A stretch of DNA of 64,000 bases from Gracilinanus agilis. Its lineage: Eukaryota. How positions within the stretch are numbered: the stretch's first letter is position 1; every line of letters starts with the position of its first letter. Of the stretch, positions 12,381 to 63,235 are shown piece after piece. The position numbers and the translations under genes are program-made. The notes beneath the pieces were generated by a model. The model searched no databases. It worked only from the letters and a program-made list of their open reading frames with translations, and was not told the origin of the DNA. Location of the stretch: the NCBI RefSeq assembly GCF_016433145.1, contig NC_058131.1:30998839-31062838 (forward strand), read 5' to 3'.

Positions 12381-12441
12381 ATGTACCTAGGAGATGATTA
12401 TGAGAACGTCAGCCTAGGGAAGCCATCACCTTGGCCACTTG
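12381..12441 (+). CDS. Gene A exon 1, cytoplasmic tail MYLGDDYENVSLGKPSPWPL(G)
   Basis: ATG 120 nt downstream of a TATA box; donor G|gtaagt at 12442; homologous in sequence and size to gene B exon 1. Confidence 0.85.
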
Positions 12442-15400
12442 GTAAGTTTCTTCCAAATCCTACTTTTCCCCTTTCTTTCCCCTCCTCTTATCTTAGAGGA
12501 ATTTCTGGATTCAGCCAGTCATTCTGTGGTCTAAGCTGGGGTCTCTGGGATATGCATAGGGAGGATTTTGAGAGGGGATCAGCCTTTGAGGCTGGCTGCT
12601 CTGGGAATCTGTATGCTTTTCCTGCAGGGAATAGTGGACTTGTCTTAGCTCTTACCCATGATTGGGCTGCTTGAGGTGATGAGAAAGATGAGCTGATCTT
12701 CTCTGGGTTGTTTGAATAGGACCTGGGGGTTGGGGGCAGTCAGGTCAGCTCTTGCATGTCCACTGGGCAAGCTCAGCACAAGGCTGTCTCTCTAAGAAAA
12801 TTTCCAGTTTACCCTGTACAGATGGAGCTCCTTTGTCCTTCGTCATCTGTCTCATTAGATTGAGAGCTCCTTGAGGGCAGAGATTGTTTTTTTCCCTCTT
12901 TCTTGTCTTTCCAGCACTTAGCACAGTGCCTGGCCCAGGTGTTTAATAGATGTCTGTTGATGTGACAGTGAACTCTCTCCCTCCCAGGACAGTTCCTCAG
13001 GATAGAACCACATCCAGCCCGCAGGACTCCAAGGATGGCCCAAGCAGCTCTCATCCTCCTGACTCTGGCCCTGCTGGCCTCCCTCACTGCTATCGTCATT
13101 ATTTGTAAGTTCCTGGGTGGTTCTTGGCTCCACATATGGTTGTATTCCTCACTTCTTGCCCCATCGGGCTCCGAGGGATTGGAATAATTGTCCTGTCCAT
13201 CTCCCTGTCTTCAGGAAAGACGTATGTAGAAGCCATTCTGGATGAGAATATTAGATGATAAGAATGAGAGCGAATATTGGTAACGTCAGCTTCTCATTAT
13301 TGCTGAAAACAAATTCCATCATTCACATTGCCTGGGACCCAGCTAAGATTTGCAAAGTGTTTTGCATTTACTGTTTAATTTGATCCTCAAAACACTGCAG
13401 AGGGTACTGTTATTATGTTCCATTTATAATTGAGAGAGATTAAGTGACTTTTCCAGGGTGACATCACTAACAGAAACAATAAATATCTGGGGTTGGATTT
13501 GAACTCAGGTCTTCCTGTGACCAAGTCTAATGCTCTATCTATGATGCAATCTTCCTTCCTCTATGTGTCTAGAACAGTGCCTGGTACCCAGCTGGCATTC
13601 ACTAAATCCTATTTATTGTAAAGGGAGCTCAGTTTGGGGGCAGCTAGGTAGCATAGTGGATAGAGAGTCAGGGCTAGAGATAGGAGGCTCTGGGTTCAAA
13701 TCTAGTTTCAGACCCTTCTTGGCCGTGTGATCCTGGGCAAGTCATTTAATCCCAATTGCCTAGCCCTTACCACTCTTCTACTTTGGACTTTTCTAAGGTC
13801 ACACACCAATACAAGTATTGATTCTAAGACAGAAGATAAGGTTTTTTTTAAAAAAGAGTCTTGTGTTTGGAGTCAGAAGACTTGGATTCTCCTCTTGGTC
13901 CTACTGATTTTGTATGATTTTGTGGCAAAGATCTGCCTCTTTTTTGGGTCTCAGTTTTCTTATTTGTAAAATAAAAAGTCCAAGTTAGGTAAAAGAAGGA
14001 TAAGACATTTATCAAGTCCTTACGCTATATGAAGCATTATGCTAACCTTTGGGGAGACAAATATATGAAGAAAGACAACCCCTGTTTTCAAGAAACTTAA
14101 ATTCTGATGGGGAGGGGCCACATATATAGGAGAATGATAATGGTCAAAGATGAGAGTTTTGTCTGGGAAATTATAGGGATAACCCTTGAGGTAGTCTCAG
14201 CTCTCCAGCTATGGTTTGAAATTGGATCTTCCATTTAAAAAAAAAATTTTTTTTTATTTTAAACCCTTAACTTCTGTGTATTGACTTATAGGTGGAAGAG
14301 TGGTAAGGGTAGGCAATGGGGGTCAAGTGACTTGCCCAGGGTCACCCAGCTGGAAAGTGTCTGAGGCCGGATTTGAACCCAGGACCTCCCGTCTCTAGGC
14401 CTGACTCTCCATCCACTGAGCTACCCAGCTGCCCCCTAGATGTTCCATTTTTTTGAAGATAACCTGGCAACCCATTCCACTGGCCCAGACCCTTAGCCAG
14501 AAGGGGTTCGATTTGGACCTCAGAGATTTTCTGGTTGATACTCGTTCATTTAGAGGAGGAGGAATGGGGTTCCGGAGCGAGTCAAACATCCGCCAAGTTC
14601 CAACGGTCACTCTAATGGCATTTGTCTCTCTTTGACATCTGATGCGCCCCAACCTTCCCGTCTCCGTCTGTTAGATTTGCAGGTAGAGACGTGCACCAGA
14701 AGAGAGGACACCCAGAGAAAGGCTTGTCTGCATAATGTCACCACCTTGACTTCAGAGACGCGGATGCTAAGGAGCCGCCTGGGGAAACTTAGGGTTCAGA
14801 TGTCAGAGATGGAGGAAACCAGGAGTGGCTTCGGAGGTATCGCAGCATCCAGCGCTGCCATGGAAAGGTCAAAAGACCGCCTGGAGACCACCACGGTCCT
14901 CCCTGTCGGTACCGAGGAGGGGCAGACCAGCACCTCTGCCGTGGACTCACGGACGCTGGAAGGTCCCGTGAAGAAGGACCTCATATTTGGGGGGGTCTCC
15001 GTGGAAAATGGCCTGCAGTTTGGGGGGGTCACGGAGGCCCCTGGAATCCACATGGACGAGGTCTCGGCGACTGTTCAAGGTCAAACAGATGTGAAGACAC
15101 TAAAAGACCTTCTGGAGCTTGTTAGTGCCTCCTACATCGCAGTGAGAGATGAGTATAGTAGGTTCTTGGGGCCTTTGGGATTGGGGACTTTCACGTTTAT
15201 TTTTAACATTTCGGTTCATAACAATAGCTGACAATGGCTTACGAAGGGCTTTTTGAAAGTCATCTTATTTGAATAAATCTTAAGGGGTCTGACTAATATC
15301 AGAATCTTAAACTGAGAGCTGCCAAGGACCTCAGAAGCCTGATAGAGTGCTGGATTTGGTGTTGGGAAGACGCCCGAGTTCAAATCTTGCCTCAAATACT

Positions 15401-18400
15401 TTCATGCTGTGTGACTCTGGGCAAAGCATTTAACCTATCTCAGCCTTACTTTCCTCACTCGTGAAATGGGAATAACAATGGTACCCCTCTCACAGGATTA
15501 TTGTGAGGTTCAAGTGAGATGACATGCAAAGTGGTTTTTGTGAACTTTAGAGTTTTATATATACTATTATTTTATTTTCATTATCATTTCTTATTCAGTC
15601 AATGCTTTGTGAAGCATTTGGAGATTTATTGGCAAAGATATTGTTTGCCATTTCCTTTTCCAGCTTATTTTATAGATGAGAAAACTGAAGCTTAATGGAG
15701 TTAAGTGACTTGCCCACAATAACCTACCTAGTAAGTGTATGAGGCTAGATTTGAACTCGGGTCTTCCTGACTCCGGGTCCAGCACTTTATCCATCGAACC
15801 ACCTAGCTGCCTCATCATCATTATTCTTATCATTGTCATCATCACTTAGGAGTGATTTGAGGCCAATAAAGTGGAAGTGATTTGCCCAAGATAACATAAG
15901 TAGCTGAGTCAGAATTTGAACCCAGGTCCTCTAAGCAAGATTTCATAGAGACTGCTTGCTCTGAAGTGACCACCGATCTTGTAATTGCCAAATCTAATGG
16001 CCTTTAGAAAAACCCTCCTCCTTCCTGACTTCTCTGCAGCCTCCGATATTGTTGATCACCCTCATCTCCCGGACACTCTCTTCTCTCTAGGATTTTGTGA
16101 TATTGCTCTCTCCAAATTCTCCTCCTGCTTCTCTGATCGCCCCTCCCCAGTCTCCTCTGCTCTATCTTCATCCAGGTGTGGGCATCTCCCTGCCCATGGC
16201 TCTATCCTCGGCTCTCTCTTCTCCCTCTGGTACCTCCCTTGGCCATTTCATCACCTCCCATGGATTCCGTTGTCACACCTATTGAGAAGTCAATCAGATT
16301 ATTTATCCAGTCCCGGCCCCTCTCCCACTTTCCAGCCTCACATTTTTAGTTTCCTGTTGGGCAACGTGGATCGAATTGGATTCTTGAACCAGGCATACAT
16401 TCAACATGTCCCAACCTGAACTCCTCCTCCTTCCTCCCTCTCAAACCCTTCCTCCGTCTCCACTGCCTCAGGTACCACCATTCTCCCAGTTACCCAGGCT
16501 AGCAGCCTAGGAGCCACCCTGGGCTTCTCCCTCATCCCAGCTCCCAATATCCAGATGGTTCAGTCCTGTCCTTCAGTTCAGCACTTTTTGCATACATCTC
16601 CTTCTTTCCTCTGGCACTGCCTGCACCTCCTCACGCCACACATGGACTCCTGCGGTAGCCACTAGAGGGCTGGGGGTTTGCCTGTCACAAAACTCTCCTC
16701 CCTCCAGTCCCTCCATCCTCCTTTCAGTTGCCAAAGTGAACTTCCTTAAGCGCACATCACCCCCTGATTGGATAAACTCCAGTGGCAGCGAGCCTCTCGA
16801 GGCACAGATAAATGGACAATCTTCTGTTTGGCTTGCAAAGTCCTCCCCAAGTTTCTGCTTTCCTGGGTTTCCAGTTTCCTCCCTTCCCTGAATACTCTAC
16901 GATGCAGGGAGAGTGAGTTCCTCACGTAAGACATTCCGTTTCCAGACTCCAGGCATTTCCACTAGCTGGAGCGCTTCGTGGACAAAGCCTGGGCATGCCT
17001 CCTGCCCGACTTCCCTCCAGTCTCAGCTCAAGTCTTACTTTCTCAGCCTCTCTTGCTTCCAATACCTTCCCCTTCAGATTGCTTGTTACATTCCCACCGT
17101 CTGAATCGGAGCCATTTGCTCGTTGTCTTCTCCGCTGGACTGTAGACTCTGAGAGTGGAGGCTGTTCCCGTCTTCCTTTGGACCCTTAGCCCGCCCACAG
17201 TGCCTCGTCCTTAATAAGTGTTAGCTCGGCTCGACTCTGACCCCAGTTCTGGAACACTTTCCACTGAGTCATCGTGTGTCATCATCCCCATCTTACACGT
17301 TAGTCAGCCGAGGCTGAGAAAGGTGAAATGACTTGCCCACTCCGTATCCTCCGTGCTGGCATGGCAACTGGCACATAGTGGGCAAATGACACAATAAATG
17401 CTCGGTTGATTGACATGATGCTACCCTCAAGTATTTGGAGGGCTGGCATTGGGAAGAGGGATTAGATTTGTCCAGCCTCACTATGTCACTAGAAATCTAG
17501 AATCACTGGAGAAAATGACTCCCAATAGCAGAGAACAGTGCCAGCCTTGCAAAGGCAAAAGACAGTCTATGTTCTTAAGAGTTTCCAAATCCGGGGGCAG
17601 CTGGGTAGCTCAGTGGCTTGAGAACCAGGCCAGAGTTGGGAGGTCCTGGGTTCAAATCTGACTTCAGACACTTCCTAGCTGTGTGACCCTGGGCAAGTCA
17701 TTTAACCCCAATTGCCTACCCTTACCACTCTTCTGCCTTTGAACCAATACATAGTATTAATTCTAAGGTGGAAGGCAAAGGTTTAAAAAAGTGAGTTTCC
17801 AAATCCAATGGGGAAGCCAGAATACAAACTAGATCCCAACAGGATCAATTGGAGATAATCTCTAAATAAGAGGATGGAACCTAGAATTAGACTCTAATTT
17901 GAATCTAGATCCCTCCCAACATCAAGTCTGTTCACTATTCTGCCTCATCATTAGGGAAATGGTCTGAGATACGCGCCCTTATTAGTTTGTTACTTCTAAG
18001 AACATGACCCACTTTCTAGAGAAGTATATGGTTCCTTCTGCAGGGGCCACTGAGCCCAAGAGCTTGCTCACCTGGCTGAGCTTACTTTTCTCAACAAACA
18101 TTTATTAAATCCTTATTATGTGCCCAGGATTGTGCCAAGCTTTCTCCCATTTCCCTATCATTTCTTTCTCAGAAATCTAGCTGGTCTTCTACTGGAACCA
18201 AGTCTCATCCAGTGGATAGAGCAACAGAGGGACCTCTAGGGCTGGGGAAAGCAAGGCTGGCCCTGTTCTCTGCTATTGGGAGTCATTTTCTCCTGTGATT
18301 CTAGTTCCTTGATTTCTCTGCTTTCTTCTCCTCAGGTATCCTCCTAACCTTCCTCTCCAAAGGCTGGAAATTCTACAATGGAAACCTTTATTATTTTTCT

Positions 18401-21400
18401 CCCAAGAAAATGTCCTGGTATGAGGCTGAAAAGTTCTGTGTATCCTGGGGGGCCCATCTGACATCCATGTCTTCCGTGGGAGAAAAGGTCAGTCCTTCTC
18501 ACCCTGATTCAAAGCAGGGATTGGAAGAACGGGATGAGGGATCGTTGTTGCTTTCCTCTTGGGGCAGGGTTGGTCTAATTCCAGGGGAGGGACACTCCTA
18601 TGGGGAAGATTCTTGAGTCGTATGACGATTTATTGGAGGAACCGGACAGGGTTAGTCTGGAAAGGAGAAGACTTGGCGAGGGGCAGAGGGGAATTGCCCA
18701 GGCTGACACCCATGCCTGGAATGCATTCTCTCCTCTCTCCTTCCCAGAACCCCGACTTTCCTTTCAAACACAATTCACGAGTCTCCTGCTTGAAGTCCTT
18801 TTTGTTCACCAGCGGCTCATGCTCTCCTCCAAAGACCTTGGATTGATTTCATTTATACTAATGTGGGTACTCATTGCTTTCCCCCATAGAATATAAACTC
18901 AAGGAGTTGTTTCCCTTTTCCCAGTGCCTGGCATAAGTCCTGACTCATAGTATGTATTTAATAAATGATTGTTTACTGATGGATTGATCTGATAGCTATC
19001 TTCCAATATTTGAAGGGCCGTTGTATGGAAGAGGGATCAAACCTGTTCTGCTCAGGTCCTGTGGGCAGAACCAAGACATTAGGTAGAAGGGACAGAAAGA
19101 AGGATTGAGTCCGATATCCTGGATAACTTCCCAGGCATTGGAGTTATCCCCAAGTGGAGAGGGCTGTTTCTGTTGAGTGATCCAATGAGCTTCCATATGT
19201 GGGATGACTGGGCAGGCGTTAGCACGTCCTATAGATGTCAGCTGTTGTGGTCATCGGTGTGGCCTTCCTCTCTGGAGGCCGTGACCAGAGGCTGGATGGC
19301 CGCACATCAAGAACGGGACAAGGGGAAGGGGCTGGGCTAGATCGCCATTTAGGTCTGGAATGCTGGGCTTCCCCAGCCTGGTAAGGGAGGGGCTCAATGG
19401 CATTTTGAAGGGGGGGTCTCCCAAGAAAACAGATGGGACGATGCCAGGGAGACCCCTAGGAAGACCTTCCTCCTCATGGATGCTTTTGTTGTTTGGTCGT
19501 TTCAATCCTGCCCGACTCCCCAAGATCCCATTTGGAGTTTTTCTCTGCAAAGATCCTGGAGTCGTTTGCCATTTCCTTCTCCAGCTCATTTCACAAATGA
19601 GGAAATTGAGGCAAACAGGGTGAACTGGCCTGCCCAGGTTCTGCAGCTAGAATGTGGCTGAGGCCGGATTTGAACTCAGGAAGACGAGTCTTCTTGCCTC
19701 CAGGCCTGACAGTCTCTCCACTGGGCTACCTCACTGCCCCTCAACAGATGTTGTAATATGGCCAGTGTCCCAGGCCTGCTCTGGCTCTCTAGAGAAGTGG
19801 TCTCCAAAGCTTTTTGGCCATATATTCCAATCGATAAGATGTTATCAGGCATTTATCCTCAATAAATGCCTATTTATTTACATATCCATTTCACATTCTT
19901 ACCAGAAAGTAGGCAACCTGTAGGTTGAAGCAGTTAGGTGGGCAGAGCATTGGGCCAGAAGTCAGGAAGACCCGAGTTCAAATCCAGATTCAGAAACTTA
20001 CTAGTTGTATGACCTTGGGCAAGTCACCTAATCTCTGTCTGCCTTATTTTCTTCAACCATACAAGGGAGATCATAATAACATCTACCTTCTAAGGTTGTT
20101 ATCAGGATCAAATGAGCTTATATTTGTTAAGCTTTTGGTTAGTGGTATGCTGCTTAGGATACAGTAGAGGCTTAATAAAAATGTTTCCCTTTCCCATTAG
20201 ATTATTATTATTTATATAGTATGAAGCTATAAAAGGAGAAATTTTAAAGGATGTAATAAGGGTGAAATAAATGATATTTTAAACAAATTTTGTACATTTT
20301 ATTTATGAATAAAGCACAATCCTCAGTGGATGCTGGCAGAGGAAAGAGAGCAGGGGTTTAAGCTGAATGGATTCCATTCTTTTAATTCATTCATTCATTT
20401 GCTCCTTTCTTCATCCATTCACTCAAGGAGAGAAGAAGAGGCCAGCTGGGGCTACGATACCCTGGATGGTTGGCTTGCTGGGTTCTTTGTACTCATTTCT
20501 AACATCTGACATTTGTATTCCTTTGTGTACGGTTGCCCCAACATTCTGGAAGCATCTTCTCTCCCCTCTTCAGTGACTCTCCCCAGGACCAACCACTGTG
20601 TGCAACGTGTGACTTCCTCTCCTCTGTGGTCATTGTGTTCTAGGAGTTCCTGTTTAGAAGAGCCAAGGGCACTCCCTACTGGATTGGCCTGAGCAGCCAC
20701 GGCACTGGGGGCACCTGGCACTGGGTCGATGGGACTCCCTACAACGAGGCCAACAGCAGAAGGTGAGTCTGGAGTCTGCCATCTTCTGGGCACATCCTTG
20801 CTTATCCAAGCTCAGCAAGACTCTGAAAGCTTTTCCTGGGGCCATCCTTGAGGAAAGGAGATGAGATTTCTGTGGCATCATTCTGCTCTTTGACTCTGTC
20901 CCTGCAGCCCCTCTAAATCATTCATTCATTCATTATCTCATCTCTTGCCTTTGCTATCAGATATATGAACATGAATCTAGAGGTTGTGACTCCTTATTTG
21001 TTGGCCTCCCACCAACCTTTAGCATCACCACCAAACCTCTGCATTGGTGGCTTCTCTTCTCTTCATTTATTTATTTCATTATTGATTTTAAATTAATTTG
21101 AATTAAATATTTTATTAGTTAAAATTAATTTTATAATATTGTTAAAATCTAAAATATGTCTCCTCTCTCTTTATGCCGCTACCAACCTCGCATGGGCTCT
21201 CATCAGCTCTCACCTGCTCCTCACTGGTCTTCTAGCCTCCATTTTCTCCCAGTCTATTCTTTCCAGGATGGCAAATGAATAATCCTAAACCCAGGTCTGG
21301 CCCCATGGCCCTCTCCTGCTCCACAAGCACTAGTGGCTTCCAAGACCAAACTCTTCTCTTGGAGTTTAAAGCCCTTCATGGTTTGAACTCCAACTTCCCT

Positions 21401-37421: not shown

Positions 37422-37587
37422 TCAATATTTGTGTCCTAACAGTGCACTGCATAGCTCAGATGATTCGCAGTTCCACTTACAGATGAACTTTAAGGTAGAT
37501 GCACAATTTAAATCATTCCATGATTTGAGCTCTTTATCCCGGAAATGGACACATTGCTCATTGTCACCATTATTGTTTGGCTCTCCG
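37422..37587 (-). CDS. Gene B CRD exon 3, visible part (GEPNNNGDNEQCVHFRDKELKSWNDLNCASTLKFICKWNCESSELCSALLGHKY*)
   Basis: EPN, E, WND and the Cys pattern are intact; acceptor and first ~4 codons fall in N-gap 37588-37748; TGA at 37424-37422. Confidence 0.92.
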
Positions 37588-43500: not shown

Positions 43501-45116
43501 CCTAGTATTGATTCCAAGGCAGAAGAGGCGTAAGGGCTAGCCAGTTGGGGTTAAGAGTCACACAGCTAGGAAATGTCAGAGGCCAGATTTGAAACTGATA
43601 ACTATTTGACAATTGGCTTCTGGGAAAAAAAGTGCACATAATACACTTTTAAATTAAATCCGCATCAGGGGCAGCTGGGTAGCTCAGTGGATGGAGAGTC
43701 AGGCCTAGAGACGGGAGGTCCTGGGTTCAAATCCGGCCTCAGACACTTCCCAGCTGTGTGACCCTGGGCAAGTCACTTGACCCCCATGGCCTAGCCCTTA
43801 CCACTCTTCTGCCTTGGAGCCAATACACAATATTGACTCCAAGAAGGAAGGTGAGGGTTTAAAGACAAACAAACAAACAAACAAATAAATCTGAATTACT
43901 AACTTTCCCCCCATCACTTTCTTAAATATAGACAATCATCAAAACGATGAATCAGGCCCTTATTTGTAGCATTTGCTAATTTCCAAAACGTTAATGTTCA
44001 TACTGACGATTTATCAACTGGCTTTCTCCAGCTCATATAACACTTTCTTGAATATATCTCTCAAATTTTACTATTTTAAAATTTTATTATTTTAGAAATT
44101 TTAGAAATTATTCTGGAAATAGTTTACTTCACACGTGCCCTAAAAGGGTCTCAGAGACTTCTGGGGTCCCTGGAACACACTTTGAGAATTGTTTATCTAG
44201 ATTGATGCATGGGTAACCAAGGATAATGGTTACAGATTCAGCTTCAGAGTCAGGAAGTCCTGTGTTCCAGCCTTGCCTCTGACACATACTGATGATGTGA
44301 CTTTGGACAAGTCCCTTACATTTAATTTTTCCTCACCCCAGAGCAGATTAGGGTCCCAGACTTAGAACTGGAGTGATCTCAGAGACCATCTAGTCTAGGT
44401 CTCTTTGAGTATAAGTTTTTGTTTTTGCATCTTTAGTATCTCTTATAGTTTCCAACCAAAATATTCATCTGGGCTATTTGTGCTAGAAAGCTCAGAGCTT
44501 TCTGAGCTAATAATGATCTGATCAGCCACAATACGTTAACTCCACCATAGTGGCATTATTTTGATCTTCTTTAAGTTCAATAATCAATCAACTATCTTTA
44601 TAGTGCCTCTCCCTCCACCACATATTTCACTGTCATTGGTTTTCTTTGAAGTCCTATATATTTTATTTTGTACAATTAAAATAGAATTCTTTAAAAAATA
44701 ATGTATTTTTTATTTCCAATGTTATTTTCTTTTTTAATTTTTAATTTCAAATTCTCTCTCCCCCCCCTTGCCCTCTCACTGAGAAGGCAGACAATATGAT
44801 ATTAATTATATATATGAAATAATGCAAAACATATTTTTATATAGTAAAAAACCAAGAAAAGCAAAGAGAGCAAATTCAACTTCAGTATCCACTTAGAGTT
44901 TATCAGTTCTTTCTCAGGAGGTGGAGAGCAGTTTTCTGTCATGAGTATTAAAATATTATTTTGAAAAAAGGTTTCACCAGACTATCCAAGGACATCCAAG
45001 TCTAGGACACAAAGGGGGTTAAGAACTCCTGGTTTCAATTCTAGACTCTTCTCCCCCTCAGGGTTTGCTCTGGTGTTTTCTCCCCTCTAATCAGAGAATG
45101 TGGAGTGTGTGTGTGT

Positions 45117-45154
<38 letters not shown>

Positions 45155-51100: not shown

Positions 51101-53173
51101 ACTTCTGTTATTGTTTGTTAATAAGTAACTGATCATTATCCCTATGGAATCACATTAAACTGGATAATTTTGATCAGAACCAATTAGGGATTAAATTGTT
51201 GATTTAAGATGGACAGGGGTCTGCTAAAATAGGATAGAGGTAAAATTATTTCTCACAGCGGTCATCTATGTCATAGGATTTAATTCCTGGATGATAATTT
51301 CCAGGGTCTTTCAAAGCTCATTTTACACACGACACCCCATCTTTTCTCTTCAAGTCTTTGCATGGGCTGTTCCCGTGCCTGGAATGATCCCCCTCTTAGG
51401 TTCCCTGACTTTATAAAACTCGTATCAAATCCTGCAGAGCAGGACATCTGCCCACCCAGGGTCTGCTTTCTCCTTCTAGTACTTTCCTCTTTGAAATTAC
51501 TTCCCACCTCATTGATATATGTGAGGTATATCTACTGATTTTCCTGTTCATCTCCACCATTAGAATAATAATTGTATTAGTTGGCATTTATATGATGCTT
51601 TAAAGTTTGCAAAAAACATTTCATTTTATCCTCTTAACAACCCTTGGAGGAAGGTGATGTTATCTCCATTTTACAGATAAGGAAATTAAGGTAGACAGAT
51701 GTTAAGTAACTTTCCCAGGATCACAGAGTTAAGAAGTGTCTGTGGCTGGATTTGGACTCAGGTCTTCCTGGCTCTAGGCCCAAGGCTTTATCCACTGTGC
51801 CATCTAGCTGAGCTTTTTGAAGATAGCTGTTTTGGACTTTCTTTATAATCCCAGCCCTCAACTCAATGCCTAGCACACAGTAAACACTTCATAAGTATTT
51901 GTTGACTGACTTAATGATACTGAGAACTGAATCAGATTCCCCAGATGTAGTTTGACCAAGGCCAGATGTGAAGGGTTTCTAATATCCTTATTTATGTTAC
52001 AGCTGAAAGGGACCCCCAAATCATCTAGCCACAGAACTATAGGATACTATATAGGAAGGGACTTTAGAGTCCCTCCGTCTATTGTCTTCTCTCTGCTTCT
52101 CCATTTTACACAAAAAGAAACTGAGGTCCAAAGAAAGTCAATGACTTGTCCAAAGTCACATAATCTACAAGTGGTAGACAAGATTCAAAACCCGGTCTTT
52201 CTACTTTGAACTCAGAGTTCTTTCCATTCCATTCCGAGGTTTTCAAGGCTGCTGATTTCTCATTTATTCAGTCAGAATGTGAATTCTTTCAAGGAACAGT
52301 CTGAGTCTCATCTTTCCCCTTTCTTGAGCCCCTAGTTCTTTTAGAGTATGAACTCTCGGGCAGAGGGTTTGCCTTTGCCTTTCTGTAAATCCTCACTATT
52401 TAGAGGCAAGAGACTTCTGAAAATTGATAAGCCTTAACCCATTTTCACTTATGAGACAGTTTAGCATCATAATGGATGGAGCATTGGACCTGGAGATGAA
52501 GAAGACCCAAGTTTGAATCCAGGCTAAGACTTTTACTAGCTGTGCGACTCTGGGGAAGTCACATCCTCCATTTCCTCATTTATAAAGTGGGAATAATAAT
52601 GGCAGGCATCTCCCAATTGTGAAGATCAGCTGAGATAACATAGAGTGCTTTGCAAACTGTGAGGTACTATATAAACGCTAATTGTTGTTGGCACAGTGCC
52701 TGACATTTATTAGGAACTTAAGAAATATTTACTGACTGACTAGTATAGGGTACAAGGTACATAGGAGGGGAAGAAGAAAGCCTGAGGATCGTGATCAATA
52801 AAATCTCTTTTAACAAATAACTTGCCAAACCTAAGCCCCCTTTCTACCCCTCCCAGCCCTAGGGCTCCTCAACCAAAATGCAGGTCAGTTCCACTGATAG
52901 GGCTCAAATAAGTCAACCTTGAGGATATGTGGTACATTGGAGAGAACAATGAACTTGTCTGATTGAACAGTCAAAATGACTTGCTTTTGAATCCCATTTG
53001 CAAGCCAAGTTGGAATATATGACCCTTACGGACCCTCACAGCTCTAAATCCAGGTTCCTTATTTTCTAGGGACTTTTCTTCTCTAGGCATAGCAGAAAAA
53101 AGGACTTACCTTTTTCAACCAGGGGCAGTTTATTTCCCTGGATCACATTTTCATAGATTCCATCTATGTCCAT
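37422..53173 (-). CDS. Gene B: langerin/CLEC4F-family type II C-type lectin with EPN/WND CRD, 7 coding exons, about 248 aa
   Basis: Exons 53110-53173, 47659-47706, 45168-45254, 41432-41530, 40938-41089, 38266-38384 and about 37599-37422 (5' end in N-gap). GT-AG wherever visible, phases 1,1,1,1,0,2. Confidence 0.9.
38266..38384 (-). CDS. Gene B CRD exon 2 (EFLYKKGNGVWYWNGLNRREDQRTFHWTDGTLFDEAKTK)
   Basis: 119 nt, tctctag acceptor, gtgagt donor; WIGL appears as WNGL. Confidence 0.93.
40938..41089 (-). CDS. Gene B CRD exon 1 (EILVQKLSEMYTVYKGNLYYFSCIEKSWTEAEQFCVSNGSHLTSVTSLEEQ)
   Basis: 152 nt; AEQFCVS..SHLTSVTS..EQ is close to langerin. Confidence 0.95.
41432..41530 (-). CDS. Gene B neck exon, 33 aa (YLRGKTDHTMSALMWKTHFERANASVTALTGQN)
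   Basis: ggttctag acceptor, G|gtgagt donor, 99 nt, phase 1-1; contains an NAS sequon. Confidence 0.85.
42011..42460. repeat. (TTCC)n and (TCC)n microsatellites flanking N-gap 42111-42370
   Basis: Read directly. Confidence 0.9.
43668..43887 (+). mobile_element. SINE1_Mdo-like SINE inserted in an older DNA-transposon-like fragment
   Basis: Full unit with (CAAA)n tail; flanks resemble the element at 45475-45720. Confidence 0.8.
45168..45254 (-). CDS. Gene B transmembrane exon (NRKPRIIHTVLALLVLILAAALSTVTYL)
   Basis: ttccttttgtccag acceptor, T|gtaagt donor, 87 nt; collinear with the gene C TM exon. Confidence 0.9.
45822..46010 (+). mobile_element. SINE1_Mdo-like SINE
   Basis: Full unit with A-tail. 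Confidence 0.85.
47659..47706 (-). CDS. Gene B exon 2, extra cytoplasmic exon (G)TYQHADNLGQTSDVW
   Basis: Strong acceptor (ttctctttctttcctcag) and donor (G|gtaagt); 48 nt; open only in phase 1. Confidence 0.65.
48150..50425 (+). mobile_element. Internally deleted, decayed L1 in gene B intron 1 (antisense to gene B)
   Basis: ORF1 C-terminal-like segment near 48200-48400; ORF2 segments (KLNNLILKNEWIKEEI...TTYQNLW..AKAVL near 48760-48890; C-terminal region 49040-49980); then 3' UTR and A-rich tail. Confidence 0.85.
50500..51280 (+). mobile_element. L3/CR1 ORF2 fragment
   Basis: gggtgattcaattatcc (GDFNYP-like) and KSRAANNKFMASLNDNFMLLNVEQITKG, a CR1 endonuclease-like segment. Confidence 0.7.
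53110..53173 (-). CDS. Gene B exon 1, MDIDGIYENVIQGNKLPLVEK(G)
   Basis: gcaggATGG start context, G|gtaagt donor, 64 nt; YENV matches gene A exon 1. Confidence 0.85.
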
Positions 53174-57316: not shown

Positions 57317-57343
57317 ATGATGTGAAGGGCTCTGTTTCTTCTG
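57317..57343 (+). other. Gene C candidate upstream exon: either 27-nt coding (D)DVKGSVSS or the end of a non-coding first exon
   Basis: Good donor G|gtaaga at 57344 and possible acceptor tttctcag at 57316; no in-frame ATG, and an in-frame TAA lies shortly upstream. Confidence 0.45.
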
Positions 57344-60300
57344 GTAAGATCCCAGTTCAGAAGAGCTCCCACCAAACAGGCTGCTCCTGAGAAGAATGAA
57401 TGGAAAGAAGGAGAATCAATGAAAACATGATCCCAAGAAACATGCTGCCTAAGACTGAAAAGGGTAAGGCCTTGGGGGAGATTTGGAGAGTTAACTGAGA
57501 TGCATGGTGAAGAGGATACTTCCAGAAAACCAGGATCAGAGATTTAGATCTAGAAAAGACATTACAATACATCTCTCACTTTTAAGATGAGGAAGTTGAG
57601 GCCTAGAAAAGTTAAATGACTTTCCCAGAGGCACACAGCTAGTAAGTGATTGAGGGTAGGATCCAGAATAAAGAAGTCCTCCAATTTGCCCTGTATATAT
57701 TTTGTGTGTAAAAAATACTTGTATGCTTATTACATTCTCTGTTGGAATGTGAGCCCCTAATGGCAGGGATTCCCTTTTGTCTTTCTTTGTATCCCTAGCA
57801 ATTAGCTCAGTGCCTCTGAAAAGTCCCTTCTAGACCTAAAGTTATGATCTTTGAGTACATCCAAGCAGCAGACATGCTGGGTGGGCTCTGTTTTTGGAAG
57901 CCACGACCCCCAGGCCCCACTAATGACTCTTTTCTCTTTTCCTCATCCAGCCTTCAGGAATCTAATGATCCTGCAAGTTGCCCTGACACTCTTGGTTCTT
58001 GTCCTGGCAACTGCCCTCAAAGTGGTGATTATCCTGTGTAAGTTTTTACCCTACCACCACGTTTTACACCTCTTCTAATCAAACTGGGAGAAAACACTAC
58101 AGAAAATCTTGGGAGGAAACAGAGTCTAGATTGACATAGCAGGGTGGGAGTTGATTAGAAATCCAGGCATGATAGCAGATGCTCTGCTTGCAAAGTCAAA
58201 AAGCGAGTCTGTGTCTTCAAGGAGACGACATTCTTTCAGGAGAAACAACACATACTCTTATGATCATTTACCAAATATATACTGTTTACATGCCATTTCC
58301 TCCCAAGAGAATGTAAAACTGGTGGTTACAGACCTTGCTATGGATGGTGTAGTTGTCAGGTGGCGATTGTCATTGCCCTTTCCTCTCTTTTGCTTTGTCT
58401 TTTGGCATTTAATCAATCGTACTGTTACAACAAACATCTATTTTTTTTAAAAAAATCTGGAGATAATGTAATAATCTTTCAAGTCCCTATAGTCTTCTCT
58501 TCTGATACTTTATAGAGTTGAAATAAATAGAAAGTTAGTACTATAGTCACAGTAGCTCAGAGCCCCCACTTAGGAAAATTGTTAACATTTAGGCAAAGGT
58601 TTGTATCTCTGCCCTAATTTAAATGTATACTTAGCCTCTCTTTGGTTGAGGAAAAATTCAGGCTAGCAGAAACATAGAGATAAAGAAATGGGTGGAGCAT
58701 GTTCCAGAGTCTGTTAATGGACAAACACTGGGAGGAGAAGTTGGGAGAGAAGACCTTTTCTGGGAACTTCCCTTCATCCTCACAAAGGTCAGCACAAAAG
58801 CTTTTAGCCCAATTTGTCTTAAATCCCCTTCTTGATTTCTCCCTTCTCCACCTCAGTTTGAACCTACTTTTTCTTTCTCTTTTCACACCTTGCCCTTGTG
58901 ATGCCCCTTCTTGATGGCTCAGTTCCTGAGCGCCTCCTTCTTCTTTCCTCTCAGTCTCTCTTGAAAACTGTTTGTGTCTCTTCAAAAACTTATGGTCCTG
59001 ACTCAAATCTCCATTCTTGTCAAAGATCTAGATGGCTTCAAATCATTCTTAGGATCCAAAAATAATGTTTATCCCTTTTAGGTACAATTTTCAGGGTTTC
59101 AGTCAGCTCCCAAATCTCTATTCCAGGACATTATCAATGCTTACTGAGTTGGGTCTATCTTCTCCCTGAGACGTCTCTCTTTCTAATGCCACAACTCTTC
59201 GATTCTAGATCTTCAAGGGGGAAGTGACCAACTTGAGAGGGTCAAGGTCTCCAACGAAGCTCTGAAAAGGCAAAATAGTGAGTCAAATCCTCCTCCCCCC
59301 TCACCCTTTGCACTGACCTTCTCCCTCAGGCCCTGACTCCTCCCCTCATTACTGAAGCTTCAGTCTCATCTGGAAAGGTATCCAAGAGAGATGAAGCTTG
59401 TTCCTCTTTTGCTAGCTTTCTCATTGTCCCTCTTCCTGACTACTTCAGAAAAAGGAGGGGACTGAAAAATTCATCATCCTTCAGCCAACAAAAGCTCTTC
59501 CTACCTGACATATCTGGACCCCAAGAGTCTTCTGATCAGATCATAATAATCGAATTCTGTCTCACATTGACCAAGATTTGGTCACTACTCTGTACCTAGA
59601 CCTCCTGAGGGCGAGAGGTAGGGCTGAACCCAGCTCATCTCTGGTCTCTCCCTGTCCTCATTCTTATTCCTCTTTCTTCCCAAGAAATCCTCAGTCAGAG
59701 AATATCACAGTCTTCAGTTGTCTATAATGGGAATCTCTACCACTTTTCCTGTGGCAAAATGTCCTGGGATGATGCTGAGAAGTACTGTGTGTCAAGAGGA
59801 TCTCATCTGACCTCAATAACTTCAGAGAAGGAACAGGTCAGTGCTGTCCTTGGGGTACCCAGAGGTGGGAAGCAGAGATATTAGCAGGCAGGGTGCCCAC
59901 TTTACCTCTTTTCCAGGCAGACCCAGACAGAGTTTCACCCATAGTTAGGGCTTATTGATAACACACCAAGAGATGAAATGCTCAAGGTGAGAGAAGTGGT
60001 TCTGTCTCACTTCCCTTTGTCCTACTTAGACCATAGATGGATTATTATGTTTGACTCTGATTCCTGATTCTGTACATTTTCATTGGCTATCTTCCATTTC
60101 TTAATTAAAGTCTTAATTAAAACCCCACTTTCCACAAGTCTCTCAGTGTTAGTGTCTTCCATCTGATATTACCTCCAACTTATCTTGTATATGTCTTGTG
60201 TGTACATAATTGTTTGCATGTTGCCTCTCCCATTAGGATGTGAGACTCTTGAGGGCAGACTTTGTTTTAGCCTCTCCTTGCATATCCAGTGTTTGGCAAA

Positions 60301-63235
60301 ATGCTTGGCACCTGGAGAATCTAAATAAATGTTTGTTGATTGATTCTCCCTTATAATCCCCACAGCACTATTACAACTTTTCTTTTGTGTCCTAATCCTT
60401 CCCACACCAACCTTCACCCTCTCTTTCATCAGAAGATCAATCTTCTTCCATAATTTACTGAGAACACTCAGAGCCTTCTTCCTGAGATCCATCTTCTTCC
60501 TTCTAACACCTAACTACCCCTCAGTGTTATCCTCCTTCACACTAGTGTTTCATGAAGAGATGGCCTTTCTCTTCACTGTGGCTAATCTTTCTACGTGTAG
60601 TCTTCATTCGATCTCCTCTTACTCCTCTGACAAATTGTTCCTACAATAATCTCTTTGCTCTCCAGTATTCTTTCTCATAATATCTGCTGACACCTTTCCT
60701 ATTGTCTAAAAACACGCCCCTGTCTCCCTCCAGTCTTAAAACCACTTTTCATTGATAGCATCACCTCTGTAGTTATGGTCCCATAGCTTTCCTTCCTTTC
60801 ATAACCATAGTTACAGAAAAAAAATCTATCTTTAGTTGACACTTTTGCCTGCTATCCCCCCACCCCTCTGCTTCTCAACTCCTTATAGTCTGGCTTTCAA
60901 ATAATCATCCAATTGCTCTCTCCAAAGTTTCCAAAGCCCCTGAGTTGCCAAATCTTGTGGCCTTTTCTCAATCTTCATCTTTCTTGATGTTTCTCCATTT
61001 CTTAACACTTTTGACAGCTCTTCTCTTGTACATGTTCTCTCCTTGAGTTTTCTTTTTTTATTATGTTTTCCCAAATACATGTAGATACAATTTTTAGTAA
61101 TTATTTTCTGAAATTTAGTGATCCATGTTCTCTTCCTTCTTTCCTCACTTCCCCTTCCCCAAGACAGCAGACACTATGATGTAGATCAGTGATTCCCAAA
61201 GTGGGCGCCACCACCCCCTGGTAAGTGCTGCAGCGATCCAGGGGGCAGTGATGGCCACAGGTGCATTTATCTTTCCTATTAATTGCTATTAAAATTAAAA
61301 AAATTAATTTCCAGGGGGCTAAGGAATATTTTTTTCTGGAAAGGGGGTGGCAGGCCAAAAAAGTTTGGGATTATACATGTGCTATCATGCAATACATATT
61401 TCTAAGTTTGTCATGTAATGAAAGAAAACACATATCGCTTATAGAAGAAAAAACCCATGAAAGAAATAAAGTTAAGAATAGTATGCTTCAATCTGATTGT
61501 GCCTCCATCACTTCCTTCTGTGATGGTGGATAGACTTTTGCATCATGAGTTCCCTGGATTCTTGCATTGCTAATAATAGATAAGTTATTCACAATTGATC
61601 ATCATTTATAATTGCTGTTATTGTGTACAACAGTCTTCTGGTTCTGCTCACTTCACTTTCATTACTTCCTGTTTTATTATCTGTTCTTATCAGTTTAATA
61701 TCTAATATGCTTCTATCCTCCTTGAATTTTCACATTGCTCTTTTCTTTTGGGGTTCCTCCTAGCTGTTTGGCTGCTTCTTACCAGTTTCTTTTGATGGAC
61801 TGTCATCTATGTTTCTCAAAGTCAGCTTTAGAATTCATTATATCTCTCCCTAATCCTTTCCTTCTTCTTAACTGGTAGAATATAAATTCCTTGAAAACAT
61901 AGATTGTTAGGGGCAGTTAGGTGGCAGTTAGAAAGATACATATCTATCCATATGTGCAGGCACACCTACACATATAAAGGGAAAACATCTGTTTTCTGAA
62001 TAAATATTTATTAAGAGCCTACTATTGGGGGCAGCTGGGTAGCTCAGTGGATGGAGAGCCAGGCCTAGAGACGGGAGGTCCTGGGTTCAAATCTGGCCTC
62101 AGACACTTCCCAGCTGTGTGACTCTGGACAAGTCACTTGACCCCCATTGCCTACTCTTACCTCTCTTCTGCCTTGGAGCCAATACACAGTATTGACTCCA
62201 AGATGGAAGGTGACGGTTTAAAAAAAATAGCCTACTATTTGCCAGCCACTAGGTGGGGGACCCAAGTTAAAAAGGAGGAAATCCTTGCTTTAAAAGAAGC
62301 CTGAGGGCCAGCTAGGTGATGCAGTGGAGAGAGCTAGCCCTGAACACAGGAGGTCCTGGGTTCAAATTTAAACAGAGACACTTCTTTGCTGTGTGATGCT
62401 GGCCAAATCGTTTAACCCCCAGTGCCTAGCCCACACTGCTCTTTTGCCTTGGAATCAATAGGTAGTATTGGTTCTAAGGTAGATGGTAAGGATTAAAAAA
62501 AAGAAGCCTAAATTATATTAGGATATTCTAATGAGTCACAGTGAAAGACAAGATGGCCTGGAAGCCAGGATCAAAACCCAGGACAAATCACTTAACTTTT
62601 CTGTACCCCCAGGAAACCCTTTAACACTTTACATTCCAAAGGAAGTGCTGACCTACATTTGTGCAGGTACTTTCCTCACCTGGGAGTTCTCTTACAATAA
62701 TAAAATTGTAGACCCAGTTTTTATTCTCTATTCTATTTTCTTTTTGTCTTTGCCCATTTTTTACCACAATGCCTGGCAAATGCTTGATAAATGCAAGGCA
62801 ATTAATTTATTAATATGTGTGTATCCATCCACACACCTATAGGCACACACATAAGATGTATAAACATACGTATATAACAAGTACATCTACATTTTTCAGA
62901 GTGAGACTGGCTACATTTCCCCTCTGGGTTCCAGGGGTACCCCTCAGGGGTTGGGATATTTCTTCTCCAATGAAATTAAAGCCATACCCCATTCTGACAT
63001 GTGCTTTAGGGATATCTATGCAAACCAATGAAATAATTACAAACATACCTGTAAGCTGCACATCCATACACAAATTTAAGCATATACCTTCTTAAAAGCA
63101 CTCACTTCTCACTCCGTAGGAATTTATTTATAAAAAGGGTGAAGGTATCTCATTCTGGATTGGACTTGATAGACAGAAGACCTCCAACTGGATCTGGGCA
63201 GACGGGTCCCCGTTTGATGAGTCTCCAAACAAGAC
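57317..63235 (+). CDS. Gene C: langerin/CLEC4F-family type II C-type lectin with a TM lysine; partial (last exon beyond window, 5' end uncertain)
   Basis: Exons 57951-58037, 59209-59277, 59685-59836, 63120-63235, plus a possible upstream exon ending at 57343. GT-AG with compatible phases; closest in sequence to gene B. Confidence 0.88.
57951..58037 (+). CDS. Gene C transmembrane exon (FRNLMILQVALTLLVLVLATALKVVIIL)
   Basis: cctcatccag acceptor, T|gtaagt donor, 87 nt; Lys codon AAA at 58019-58021. Confidence 0.9.
59209..59277 (+). CDS. Gene C neck exon, 23 aa (YLQGGSDQLERVKVSNEALKRQN)
   Basis: gattctag acceptor, A|gtgagt donor, 69 nt; ends LKRQN like the end of the langerin neck. Confidence 0.85.
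59685..59836 (+). CDS. Gene C CRD exon 1 (ILSQRISQSSVVYNGNLYHFSCGKMSWDDAEKYCVSRGSHLTSITSEKEQ)
   Basis: 152 nt, cttcccaag acceptor, gtcagt donor. Confidence 0.95.
60160..61030 (+). mobile_element. L2 fragments in the gene C intron
   Basis: Pyrimidine-rich L2-type sequence, e.g. ttgccaaatcttgtggccttttctcaatcttcatctttcttgat. Confidence 0.6.
62027..62228 (+). mobile_element. SINE1_Mdo-like SINE (an older copy follows at about 62305-62500)
   Basis: Full unit with A-tail. Confidence 0.85.
63120..63235 (+). CDS. Gene C CRD exon 2 (EFIYKKGEGISFWIGLDRQKTSNWIWADGSPFDESPNK)
   Basis: 116 nt (one codon shorter than paralogs), ctccgtag acceptor, gtgagt donor. Confidence 0.93.

What the first reader, a model, noticed from the sequence alone, without database searches (positions are those of the whole stretch)
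12381..63235. Diversified marsupial langerin/CLEC4F-family cluster resembling a paired-receptor system
Seen: three paralogs share the langerin-type exon plan but differ at every functional module. A has a YENV tail, long neck and a CRD lacking the canonical sugar site. B has a YENV tail, short neck and intact EPN/WND. C has a TM lysine, the shortest neck and no tyrosine-motif exon found. Known: human and mouse have only CD207 and CLEC4F in this clade; neither is known as an adaptor-coupled or tyrosine-signalling receptor, while tyrosine-motif versus charged-TM pairs are typical of NKG2, Ly49 and the DCIR/Dectin-2 group. Inference: marsupials may have built a signalling receptor family on the langerin scaffold. 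The genes may already carry generic LOC names; the claimed novelty is the architecture.
Basis: partly seen in the sequence, partly recalled or inferred. Interest (0 to 1): 0.82.

Follow-up and report, generated by a model that had tools for sequence, protein, structure and literature searches.

The report
Marsupial langerin-like lectin receptor cluster
Three old, intact-looking langerin-like lectin receptor genes lie side by side in this opossum window; one belongs to a marsupial-wide branch that lost an ancestral tail tyrosine and gained a membrane lysine, the usual mark of an adaptor-coupled activating receptor.

Summary
The window (agile gracile opossum, per a scan note) carries three type II C-type lectin genes with the langerin six-exon plan: A (+, 12381-26785), B (-, 53173-37422) and C (+, 57400 to beyond 64000). 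All visible splice sites are canonical.

One correction: C does have a first exon (57400-63). It is homologous to B's YENV exon, but the Tyr codon is now Asn.

Orthologues exist across marsupial orders, all named only "CLEC4K-like" or "CLEC4F-like". Solved langerin is the best structural-database match, and CLEC4F is second.

A CRD tree puts B as sister to C1+C2 (100/97). All 11 C-type proteins carry the same transmembrane Lys and no cytoplasmic Tyr.

YENV is not a marsupial invention. YEN[VIML] at residues 5-10 also occurs in monotreme, turtle and alligator relatives. It aligns with KQNI of human langerin and matches the position of the YENF endocytic motif of CLEC10A.

My reading: an ancestral endocytic or hemITAM-like tail is kept in A and B and was lost in eutherians. 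The marsupial C lineage is predicted to be adaptor-coupled.

No RNA or protein evidence was obtainable. B's last exon starts inside an assembly gap and C's last exon lies outside the window. The scan had noted the Lys and A's altered sugar site on this same window.

The parts
12381..12441 (+). Gene A exon 1: MYLGDDYENVSLGKPSPWPL, ends in phase 1
   Evidence: ATG plus GTAAGT donor. DDYENVSLGK.SPWPLGQF is conserved in bilby, Dromiciops and echidna proteins.
12988..13104 (+). Gene A transmembrane exon (117 nt), no charged residue in the core
   Evidence: It aligns with the human langerin TM region.
14675..15157 (+). Gene A neck exon (483 nt, 161 aa, Gly/Pro-rich middle part)
   Evidence: About 50% identical to koala and bilby 391-aa proteins.
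18336..18487 (+). Gene A CRD exon 1 (152 nt)
20644..20762 (+). Gene A CRD exon 2 (119 nt, WIGL)
26599..26785 (+). Gene A CRD exon 3 with stop; QSQ..D..WNE replaces EPN..E..WND
   Evidence: The C-terminal tail KKALKRFEEDLDV matches orthologues.
53110..53173 (-). Gene B exon 1: MDIDGIYENVIQGNKLPLVEK, ends in phase 1
   Evidence: Orthologous exon in Dromiciops (L004 6695-6633) and in the Petaurus protein P0167.
45168..45254 (-). Gene B transmembrane exon (87 nt), Ser at the position of C's Lys
41432..41530 (-). Gene B short neck exon (99 nt)
   Evidence: Petaurus P0167 has the same TM-to-neck junction.
40938..41089 (-). Gene B CRD exon 1 (152 nt)
38266..38384 (-). Gene B CRD exon 2 (119 nt, WNGL variant of WIGL)
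37422..37587 (-). Gene B CRD exon 3, visible part only (GEPNN..E..WND..FICK, stop TGA); its 5' end lies in the gap 37588-37748
   Evidence: phmmer against solved structures: langerin 4e-9, CLEC4F 1e-3.
57400..57463 (+).
   Evidence: Homologous exons in tammar P0157 (GISENM), Dromiciops L004 9959-10021 (IFENV) and Antechinus L006 9962-10021 (ISENK).
57951..58037 (+). Gene C transmembrane exon (87 nt) with Lys (AAA) six residues before the exon end
59209..59277 (+). Gene C neck exon (69 nt)
59685..59836 (+). Gene C CRD exon 1 (152 nt)
63120..63235 (+). Gene C CRD exon 2 (116 nt); the last CRD exon is not in the window

Best explanation
Shown:
- The window holds three neighbouring members (A, B, C1) of a langerin (CD207/CLEC4K)-like subfamily of type II C-type lectin receptors. 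The subfamily expanded before the marsupial radiation, and the same order and orientation (A+, B-, C1+) are kept in Dromiciops.
- A is the long-necked member. Its cytoplasmic and TM region still aligns with human langerin, and it has orthologue-like genes in monotremes. Its Ca2+/sugar site is remodelled in every marsupial examined.
- B is a short-necked member with an intact EPN/WND site.
- A and B keep an N-terminal acidic-YENV motif.
- C descends from a B-like gene. In all 11 C1/C2 proteins examined the tail Tyr is gone (N, F or S in the four exon-1 sequences read) and an invariant Lys sits in the outer third of the membrane helix.

Inferred:
- YENV is the ancestral Tyr-based endocytosis, possibly hemITAM-like, signal of this receptor group, equivalent to YENF of CLEC10A and YQDL of ASGR1. 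Eutherian langerin and CLEC4F lost it.
- C therefore no longer relies on its own tail. It pairs through the Lys with an Asp-bearing ITAM or YxxM adaptor (DAP12, FcR-gamma or DAP10) and acts as an activating receptor.
- Because C orthologues lack the canonical sugar site, its ligand is probably not a simple mannose-type glycan.
For: - Gene models: canonical splice sites, shared phases 1,1,1,0,2 and identical 152-nt CRD1 exons.
- Orthologues: A in Dromiciops, bilby, possum, wombat, koala and tammar, with echidna and platypus 384-aa proteins carrying DYENVSLGK.SPWPLGQF. B in Petaurus and Dromiciops. C1/C2 in nine further proteins.
- Best solved-structure matches, in bits for langerin versus CLEC4F: A 145/127, C1 131/97, C2 131/102, B last exon 39/22. 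The koala CLEC4F-like protein gives 154/212.
- CRD-only tree: B+(C1+C2) 100/97, C1+C2 99/89, and marsupial A with monotreme A-like 90/88.
- Trait table: TM Lys in 11 of 11 C proteins and in none of 39 others. A cytoplasmic YEN[VIML] at residues 5-10 in most A, B, monotreme, turtle and alligator sequences, in 0 of 11 C proteins, and in none of the eight eutherian CLEC4F proteins.
- Human full-length langerin aligns VDKQNISLWPREPPP to A's DDYENISLGKPSPWPL.
- C exon 1 is homologous to B exon 1 at the DNA level, with TAT changed to AAT.
- The Lys codon is AAA in three species while flanking codons differ synonymously.
- Pairwise dN/dS against Dromiciops: A 0.44 and C 0.46. A's exon 1 gives 0.12 and C's exon 1 gives 1.8.
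- Literature: YENF/YQDL endocytic motifs at Tyr5, also described as a hemITAM (PMC7404283). Basic TM residue plus short tail as the hallmark of DAP12/FcR-gamma partners (PMC6557307).
Against: - No RNA or protein evidence. No RNA run holds the locus and the single read-laying run failed on a filter.
- B's last exon begins in an assembly gap and C's last exon is outside the window, so the integrity of B and C in this genome is not fully shown.
- The Lys lies only about six residues from the outer end of the helix, where it could simply snorkel.
- Val at +3 is not the preferred Syk or AP-2 residue, and N at +2 also fits a Grb2 SH2 site, so the role of YENV is open.
- Presence of the adaptor genes in this genome was not tested.
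- No full-length eutherian CD207 could be put in the tree, so which marsupial gene (if any) is the CD207 orthologue is unresolved.
- The dN/dS values for single exons rest on about 20 codons.
Confidence: 0.6

Rival explanations
1. Marsupials built a true paired signalling system on the langerin scaffold. YENV is a phosphotyrosine signalling motif (inhibitory, or Grb2/Syk-recruiting), and B and C are functional counterparts that see the same ligands with opposite or complementary outputs.
For: - B and C are sister lineages and lie head to head about 4 kb apart here and in Dromiciops.
- Tyr loss and Lys gain coincide on the C stem.
- pYxN is a Grb2-type site (textbook knowledge).
- The YENF motif of CLEC10A has been linked to Src/Syk signalling (PMC7404283).
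Against: - The motif is ancestral in amniotes, not a marsupial novelty.
- It does not fit the ITIM consensus: position -2 is D in A and G in B.
- B and C CRDs share only about 50-55% identity.
- C orthologues have KPN, QPN or KPS and lack WND, whereas B keeps EPN/WND, so shared ligands are unlikely.
Confidence: 0.2
2. The transmembrane Lys of C has no adaptor role. It snorkels to the outer leaflet or serves oligomerisation or retention. C would then be a non-signalling lectin-like protein, for example a decoy or a co-receptor of B.
For: - The Lys is only about six residues from the extracellular end of the hydrophobic stretch.
- No adaptor association can be tested in silico here.
- phmmer of the TM exon against solved structures found nothing.
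Against: - The Lys is invariant in 11 proteins of two paralogous lineages that split before the marsupial radiation. The codon is AAA in three species amid synonymous change in neighbouring codons.
- Its gain coincides with loss of the tail Tyr and with relaxed constraint on exon 1.
Confidence: 0.2
3. One or more of the three genes is a pseudogene or unexpressed relic in this species, and the features are of no present function.
For: - No transcript evidence.
- B's last exon is cut by a gap and C's last exon is unseen.
- A's CRD exon 3 evolves at dN/dS of about 1.
Against: - All 17 visible exons are open with canonical splice sites.
- Overall dN/dS is about 0.45 for A and C against Dromiciops.
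- Orthologues are retained in at least five marsupial orders.
Confidence: 0.08

Closest known systems
Langerin (CD207, CLEC4K) of eutherians
   Same: - Type II topology and the six-exon plan.
- Short-form CRD without the N-terminal Cys pair.
- Best hit among solved structures for A, B and C-type proteins.
- A's cytoplasmic and TM region aligns with human langerin.
- B keeps EPN..E..WND.
   Different: - Human langerin has KQNI where A has YENV/I, so it lacks the tyrosine. It carries the WPREPP motif and its signalling is unknown (PMC7358460).
- A has lost the canonical sugar site.
- B and C have necks of only 23-33 residues instead of a long trimerising coiled coil.
- C has a TM Lys.
CLEC4F (Kupffer cell receptor)
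   Same: - Sister family of langerin in the same chromosomal neighbourhood.
- Second-best solved-structure match.
- In Dromiciops a CLEC4F-like gene lies about 120 kb from the A-B-C1 cluster.
   Different: - CLEC4F has seven exons, a QPD galactose-type site and no endocytosis signal in its tail (PMC6422238).
- Marsupials have their own clear CLEC4F-like gene: the koala protein gives 212 bits to mouse CLEC4F, and it is distinct from A, B and C.
CLEC10A (MGL) YENF and ASGR1 YQDL tails
   Same: A Tyr-x-x-hydrophobic motif 5-7 residues from the N-terminus of a group II type II lectin. YENV/I/M/L differs from YENF only in the last residue (PMC7404283).
   Different: These belong to a different branch of group II, with a long-form CRD and a QPD site. 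Whether the tail motifs are homologous or convergent was not tested.
Activating/inhibitory C-type lectin sets (NKG2A/C, Ly49, DCIR/DCAR, Dectin-2 group, CLEC5A)
   Same: One lineage has a tail tyrosine motif. A derived lineage has a short Tyr-less tail and a basic residue in the TM. The genes are clustered.
   Different: - These sit in a different gene complex (the NKC on another chromosome) and in different CTLD subfamilies.
- The tail motif here is not an ITIM.
- The ectodomains of B and C are far more diverged than in classical pairs.
- Adaptor coupling is unproven.
Zebrafish immune-related lectin-like receptors (illr)
   Same: A clustered family of group II-like lectin receptors described as resembling NK lectin receptors (PMC3319919). 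An alligator relative of the present family is annotated as illr2.
   Different: This is a teleost family. Its relationship to the marsupial genes rests only on an automatic annotation and was not tested.

Membership tests
Group II C-type lectin receptors, langerin/CLEC4F clade | Type II topology: N-terminal tail, one TM helix, neck, C-terminal CTLD | tested here: met
   Exon order and hydropathy for A, B and C.
Group II C-type lectin receptors, langerin/CLEC4F clade | CTLD signature (WIGL, four Cys of the short-form CRD, Pfam Lectin_C) | tested here: met
   The exon sequences show the signature. PF00059 is recorded on all orthologues. B has WNGL, which is conserved in Petaurus.
Group II C-type lectin receptors, langerin/CLEC4F clade | Closest relatives are langerin and CLEC4F rather than other CTLD families | tested here: met
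   phmmer against PDB gives langerin first, CLEC4F second, and Mincle, DC-SIGN and ASGR far lower.
Group II C-type lectin receptors, langerin/CLEC4F clade | Location beside CLEC4F in the CD207/CLEC4F region | tested here: inconclusive
   The window has no flanking gene. In Dromiciops the same A-B-C1 cluster lies about 120 kb from a CLEC4F-like gene and a CGI-121 (TPRKB-type) gene. The human map positions are from memory only.
Langerin proper (CD207 orthologue) | EPN..E..WND mannose-type Ca2+ site | tested here: not met
   - A: QSQ..D..WNE.
- B: met in the visible part.
- C: not in the window; orthologues have KPN, QPN or KPS and no WND.
Langerin proper (CD207 orthologue) | One-to-one orthology with eutherian CD207 in a gene tree | tested here: inconclusive
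   Only a 50-aa eutherian langerin fragment was obtainable. Its placement is unresolved (AU p 0.17-0.26 for three placements). Placement within B+C alone is weakly disfavoured (p 0.04).
Adaptor-coupled activating receptors (DAP12 / FcR-gamma / DAP10 partners) | Basic residue inside the TM helix | tested here: met
   C has Lys in ..LATALKVVIIL. The Lys is invariant in 11 of 11 C1/C2 proteins and absent from 39 relatives.
Adaptor-coupled activating receptors (DAP12 / FcR-gamma / DAP10 partners) | Short cytoplasmic tail without tyrosine motif | tested here: met
   C's tail is at most about 26 residues and has no Tyr. The Tyr position of B's exon 1 is Asn.
Adaptor-coupled activating receptors (DAP12 / FcR-gamma / DAP10 partners) | Physical and functional association with an Asp-bearing adaptor | not testable with these tools
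   Needs co-expression, co-precipitation and reporter assays. Adaptor genes of this genome were not searched.
ITIM-bearing inhibitory receptors | (I/V/L/S)-x-Y-x-x-(I/V/L) in the tail | tested here: not met
   A has G-D-D-Y-E-N-V (position -2 is D) and B has D-G-I-Y-E-N-V (position -2 is G).
Tyr-based endocytic / hemITAM-like tails of group II lectins (CLEC10A YENF, ASGR1 YQDL) | Y-x-x-hydrophobic within the first 5-10 residues, with acidic residues upstream | tested here: met
   A has DDYENV at Tyr7 and B has DIDGIYENV at Tyr7. The same holds in monotreme and sauropsid relatives. The motif definition is from PMC7404283. The function itself was not tested.

The most novel reading that the evidence does not exclude
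Marsupials possess a lineage-specific activating branch of the langerin family (C1/C2). It is coupled through an invariant transmembrane Lys to DAP12, FcR-gamma or DAP10. It arose before the marsupial radiation from an endocytic YENV-tailed, mannose-type ancestor and has since changed ligand class. Conversely, eutherian langerin and CLEC4F are the derived forms that lost an ancestral amniote tyrosine tail.
Probability: 0.4. Interest if true: 0.7.

Novelty: new variant of a known kind. Interest (0 to 1): 0.55.

Why it matters
Langerin and CLEC4F are treated as receptors without a defined signalling route. That view rests on eutherians only.

The data suggest two things:
- The ancestral amniote receptor had a Tyr-based tail like the ASGR/MGL receptors, and eutherians lost it.
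- Marsupials turned one copy into what looks like an adaptor-coupled activating receptor, and kept it for roughly the whole history of the group.

This gives a concrete, testable set of genes for marsupial myeloid and Langerhans-cell biology, an area with almost no characterised pattern-recognition receptors. It is also a further independent case of activating receptors arising from tyrosine-motif homologues, outside the NK gene complex and the leukocyte receptor complex. In the databases these genes carry only automatic "CLEC4K-like" or "CLEC4F-like" names, and I found no paper that describes them.

Tried and rejected
- RNA evidence. Two run searches found only DNA-type holders.
- Eutherian CD207 for the tree. 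The only langerin-like entry returned was an 87-aa fragment on contigs under 1 kb (P0127). The Sorex CLEC4F locus holds only the 3' end of its CD207 (CRD2 and last-exon sequence), and that copy looks aberrant. Three other look-ups were not on record. The 50-aa fragment could not be placed.
- phmmer of C's TM exon against solved structures, hoping for the NKG2C-DAP12 TM complex: no hit.
- Search for C's last CRD exon in 63236-64000 and for extra CTLD exons anywhere in the window: none.
- Search of scan notes for flanking genes: nothing.
- ITIM reading of YENV: rejected on the -2 position.
- Reading B and C as a recent duplicate pair: rejected. They share 68-75% nucleotide identity in exons only.
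- An alternative acceptor for A's neck exon (CAG|GTAGAG): rejected because it runs into a closed frame.
- Assembly gaps were not filled or looked up.
Full report
**What is in the window**

Six-frame scanning found three and only three CTLD gene copies. They came out at the same coordinates.

- **Gene A** (+ strand) has six exons: 12381-12441, 12988-13104, 14675-15157, 18336-18487, 20644-20762 and 26599-26785. All have AG/GT sites, and they give a continuous 1119-nt reading frame of 372 aa.
- **Gene B** (- strand) has exons 53173-53110, 45254-45168, 41530-41432, 41089-40938, 38384-38266 and 37587-37422.
- **Gene C** (+ strand) has exons 57951-58037, 59209-59277, 59685-59836 and 63120-63235, plus a first exon described below.

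Intron phases are 1, 1, 1, 0, 2 in all three. The CRD1 exons are all 152 nt, and B and C share 87-nt TM exons. This is the langerin six-exon layout, not the seven-exon CLEC4F layout described by Taylor et al. (PMC6422238). A self-comparison shows only exon-centred similarity of 68-75% between the genes, so they are old paralogues.

- A starts MYLGDDYENV, has a 483-nt neck exon, and reads FWTGSQSQSWKTGDNC...WNERDC where langerin has FWIPGEPNN..NEHC...WNDAPC.
- B starts MDIDGIYENV, has a 99-nt neck exon, and reads GEPNNNGDNEQC...WNDLNC...FICK.
- C has Lys in the hydrophobic core of the TM exon (..LVLVLATALKVVIIL) and a 69-nt neck exon.

One point needed correction. Using N-termini of orthologues as probes, I found C's first exon at 57400-57463. 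It reads MERRRINENMIPRNMLPKTEK, is 64 nt long like B's, ends in phase 1 and has donor GTAAGG. A DNA alignment shows it is the homologue of B's YENV exon, with the Tyr codon TAT replaced by AAT.

**Assembly gaps**

- 23705-24021 lies in A's last intron. Koala, bilby and Dromiciops proteins join the same two exons, and their C-terminal tails match A's last exon. A's model therefore does not depend on the gap.
- 37588-37748 swallows the acceptor and about four codons of B's last exon. Its frame relative to exon 5 cannot be verified. What is visible is open for 54 codons to the stop.
- 42111-42370 lies in B's TM/neck intron, and the Petaurus orthologue goes directly from TM to neck.
- 54797-55106 lies between the two head-to-head first exons of B and C. 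36382-36535 is downstream of B.
- C's last CRD exon is not in 63236-64000.

I did not fill or look up any gap.

**Family assignment**

phmmer against all solved structures puts langerin first and CLEC4F second for every query.

| Query | Langerin | CLEC4F |
|---|---|---|
| B last exon | 39 bits (4e-9) | 22 bits (1e-3) |
| A orthologue (Dromiciops) | 145 bits | 127 bits |
| C1 (tammar) | 131 bits | 97 bits |
| C2 (Monodelphis) | 131 bits | 102 bits |
| Koala CLEC4F-like | 154 bits | 212 bits |

Mincle, DC-SIGN and ASGR score 50-70 bits for the A, C1 and C2 queries. The koala result shows that marsupials have a separate CLEC4F gene. The genes thus belong to the langerin/CLEC4F group, on the langerin side.

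**Orthologues and naming**

A profile search of 1.8 billion representative proteins with the three CRD1 exons, followed by word-based searches, returned named relatives.

- **A** has 375-391-aa orthologues in Dromiciops, bilby, brushtail possum, wombat, koala and tammar. Echidna and platypus have 384-aa A-like proteins.
- **B** is represented by a partial Petaurus protein and by an exon in the Dromiciops locus.
- **C** belongs to a family that splits into C1 (Dromiciops, tammar, koala and one unnamed protein) and C2 (Monodelphis, Petaurus, koala, Antechinus, tammar, bilby). The window's gene groups with C1.

All carry only automatic names ("C-type lectin domain family 4 member K-like", "member F-like" or "uncharacterized").

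**Tree**

A maximum-likelihood tree of the CRDs alone was built from 47 rows. It therefore uses none of the tail or TM residues.

- B is sister to C1+C2 (100/97), and C1+C2 are joined at 99/89.
- The window's A sits inside marsupial A (100/99), next to the monotreme A-like pair (90/88).
- The nearest relatives of B+C are a 244-aa platypus protein (YENI, EPN/WND) and a tammar QPT protein (91/89).

**Distribution of the two traits**

- The TM Lys is present in 11 of 11 C1/C2 proteins at the same place (A-L-K-V-V/M-V/I-I/F-L) and in none of the 39 other family members listed.
- Its codon is AAA in Gracilinanus C1, Dromiciops C1 and Antechinus C2, while neighbouring Leu, Val and Ile codons differ synonymously.
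- A cytoplasmic YEN[VIML] at residue 5-10 is present in marsupial A and B, in all four monotreme genes, in many turtle genes and in an alligator gene. A minority of N-terminally truncated or extended gene models of the A and turtle groups do not show it at that position.
- It is absent from all C proteins, from eight eutherian CLEC4F proteins, and from the marsupial CLEC4F-like and QPT genes.
- The one full-length human langerin chain in the PDB aligns VDKQNISLWPREPPP with A's DDYENISLGKPSPWPL, followed by the TM helices. Human langerin therefore has Lys-Gln at the Tyr-Glu position.
- In the four C-type first exons I could read, the Tyr position is Asn, Phe, Ser and Ser. Dromiciops C1 has also lost the first ATG.

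**Locus conservation**

In Dromiciops chromosome CM033366.1 the order is as follows:

- A (+) at 679.223-679.239 Mb.
- B (-) with its first exon at 679.2776 Mb.
- C1 (+) at 679.281-679.2925 Mb.
- A CGI-121 (TPRKB-type) gene and a CLEC4F-like gene about 110-130 kb further on.

The A+/B-/C1+ arrangement is the same as in the window. This includes the large first intron of B and the 3-4 kb between the B and C first exons. From memory, TPRKB, CLEC4F and CD207 all lie in human 2p13. I could not check that with the tools.

**Constraint**

Nei-Gojobori estimates against Dromiciops give dN/dS of 0.44 for A (349 codons) and 0.46 for C (159 codons), with dS of about 0.5.

- For A: exon 1 gives 0.12, the TM exon 0.29, CRD1 0.21, and the loop-bearing last exon about 1.0.
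- For C: the TM exon gives 0.37, CRD1 0.24, and exon 1 1.8.

The single-exon values rest on few codons and are only indicative. They fit a constrained YENV exon in A and an unconstrained former-YENV exon in C.

**How it most likely works**

*Shown.* This is a conserved marsupial cluster of langerin-like receptors with three architectures. YENx is ancestral, and Lys gain with Tyr loss happened on the stem of C.

*Inferred for YENV.* CLEC10A carries YENF and ASGR1 carries YQDL at Tyr5. These are endocytosis motifs, and the CLEC10A motif has also been called a hemITAM that signals through Src/Syk (PMC7404283).
- A and B have the same kind of motif at the same distance from the N-terminus, preceded by acidic residues.
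- I take it to be an internalisation signal first, about 55%. A Syk- or Grb2-recruiting signalling site is about 30%.
- It is not an ITIM.

*Inferred for C.* Activating receptors typically have short tails and a basic TM residue that pairs with the Asp of DAP12 or FcR-gamma (PMC6557307). C fits this in every sequence-level respect. I put adaptor coupling at about 45-50%.

*Ligands.* A's sugar site is remodelled in all marsupials (QSQ, QPQ or HPQ; WNE, WKE or WND) and in monotremes (RPD, WNG). C orthologues have KPN, QPN or KPS without WND. Only B (EPN/WND) is expected to bind mannose-type glycans in the canonical way.

**Comparison with the known, and novelty**

Human langerin is described as having only a putative proline-rich motif and unknown signalling (PMC7358460). 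The rat Kupffer cell receptor has no endocytosis signal (PMC6422238). Full-text searches combining langerin, CD207 or CLEC4K with marsupial terms found no paper on these genes.

The pattern of an activating form derived from a tyrosine-motif form is well known from NKG2, Ly49, KIR and DCIR/DCAR. I therefore class this as a new variant of a known kind, not a new kind.

The activating-type branch is real and marsupial-wide. The tyrosine tail is inherited, is probably endocytic, and is not an inhibitory partner motif. B and C are too diverged to be a classical pair.

**Limits**

- There are no transcript data.
- B's and C's last exons are not fully visible.
- Adaptor genes were not examined.
- Orthology to eutherian CD207 is unresolved, because only a 50-aa eutherian langerin fragment could be brought into the tree.

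Noticed in passing
window 33471-35140 (+): Open frames with a gag-like zinc knuckle (CFLCGKIGHIVQNC) and a 197-aa Lys/Glu-rich frame lie between genes A and B. This looks like a retroelement fragment.
   Followed up: no
window 48680-50010: LINE-like open frames on both strands sit inside B's 7.8-kb first intron. They probably explain why this intron is so much longer than the roughly 0.5-kb first introns of A and C.
   Followed up: no
window, e.g. 1335-1533, 14274-14436, 43668-43863, 45823-45984, 62028-62227: A SINE of about 200 bp is present in more than 20 copies at 72-95% identity, several of them inside the introns of A, B and C.
   Followed up: partly
window 12285-12380; 45100-45165; 41956-42553: Simple repeats abut coding exons. 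A (GAGACA)n tract lies directly upstream of A's ATG, a (CA)n tract directly follows B's TM-exon donor, and (GGAAGG)n flanks the gap 42111-42370.
   Followed up: no
L005 1-1086 (Sorex araneus, upstream of CLEC4F): The 3' end of the shrew CD207 gene looks damaged. The WIGL Trp reads Cys, the CRD2 reading frame shifts, and the last exon starts at KPNN without the FW..GE residues. It may be a decaying langerin gene.
   Followed up: partly
L006 38665-40163 (-) (Antechinus flavipes): A further family member with intact EPN..E..WND lies tail to tail with the Antechinus C2 gene. The marsupial family is therefore larger than A, B, C1 and C2.
   Followed up: partly
P0153 (platypus CLEC4K-like isoform X1): This isoform has two tail tyrosine motifs, YENI at residue 5 and YEDI at residue 28. 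The arrangement is ITAM-like, though the spacing is wider than in a classical ITAM.
   Followed up: no
window 14900-15100 (A neck) and orthologues P0035, P0044: The middle of A's neck is Gly/Pro-rich with FGGV(S/T)E-type repeats, which are expanded as FGRVTEPPG repeats in the Tasmanian devil. This is unlike the continuous heptad coiled coil of langerin.
   Followed up: no
P0058 (tammar, contig of 389.6 Mb): A QPT-site 'CLEC4K-like' gene related to B and C sits on a different tammar chromosome-scale contig from the tammar A and C genes (contig of 762.2 Mb).
   Followed up: no
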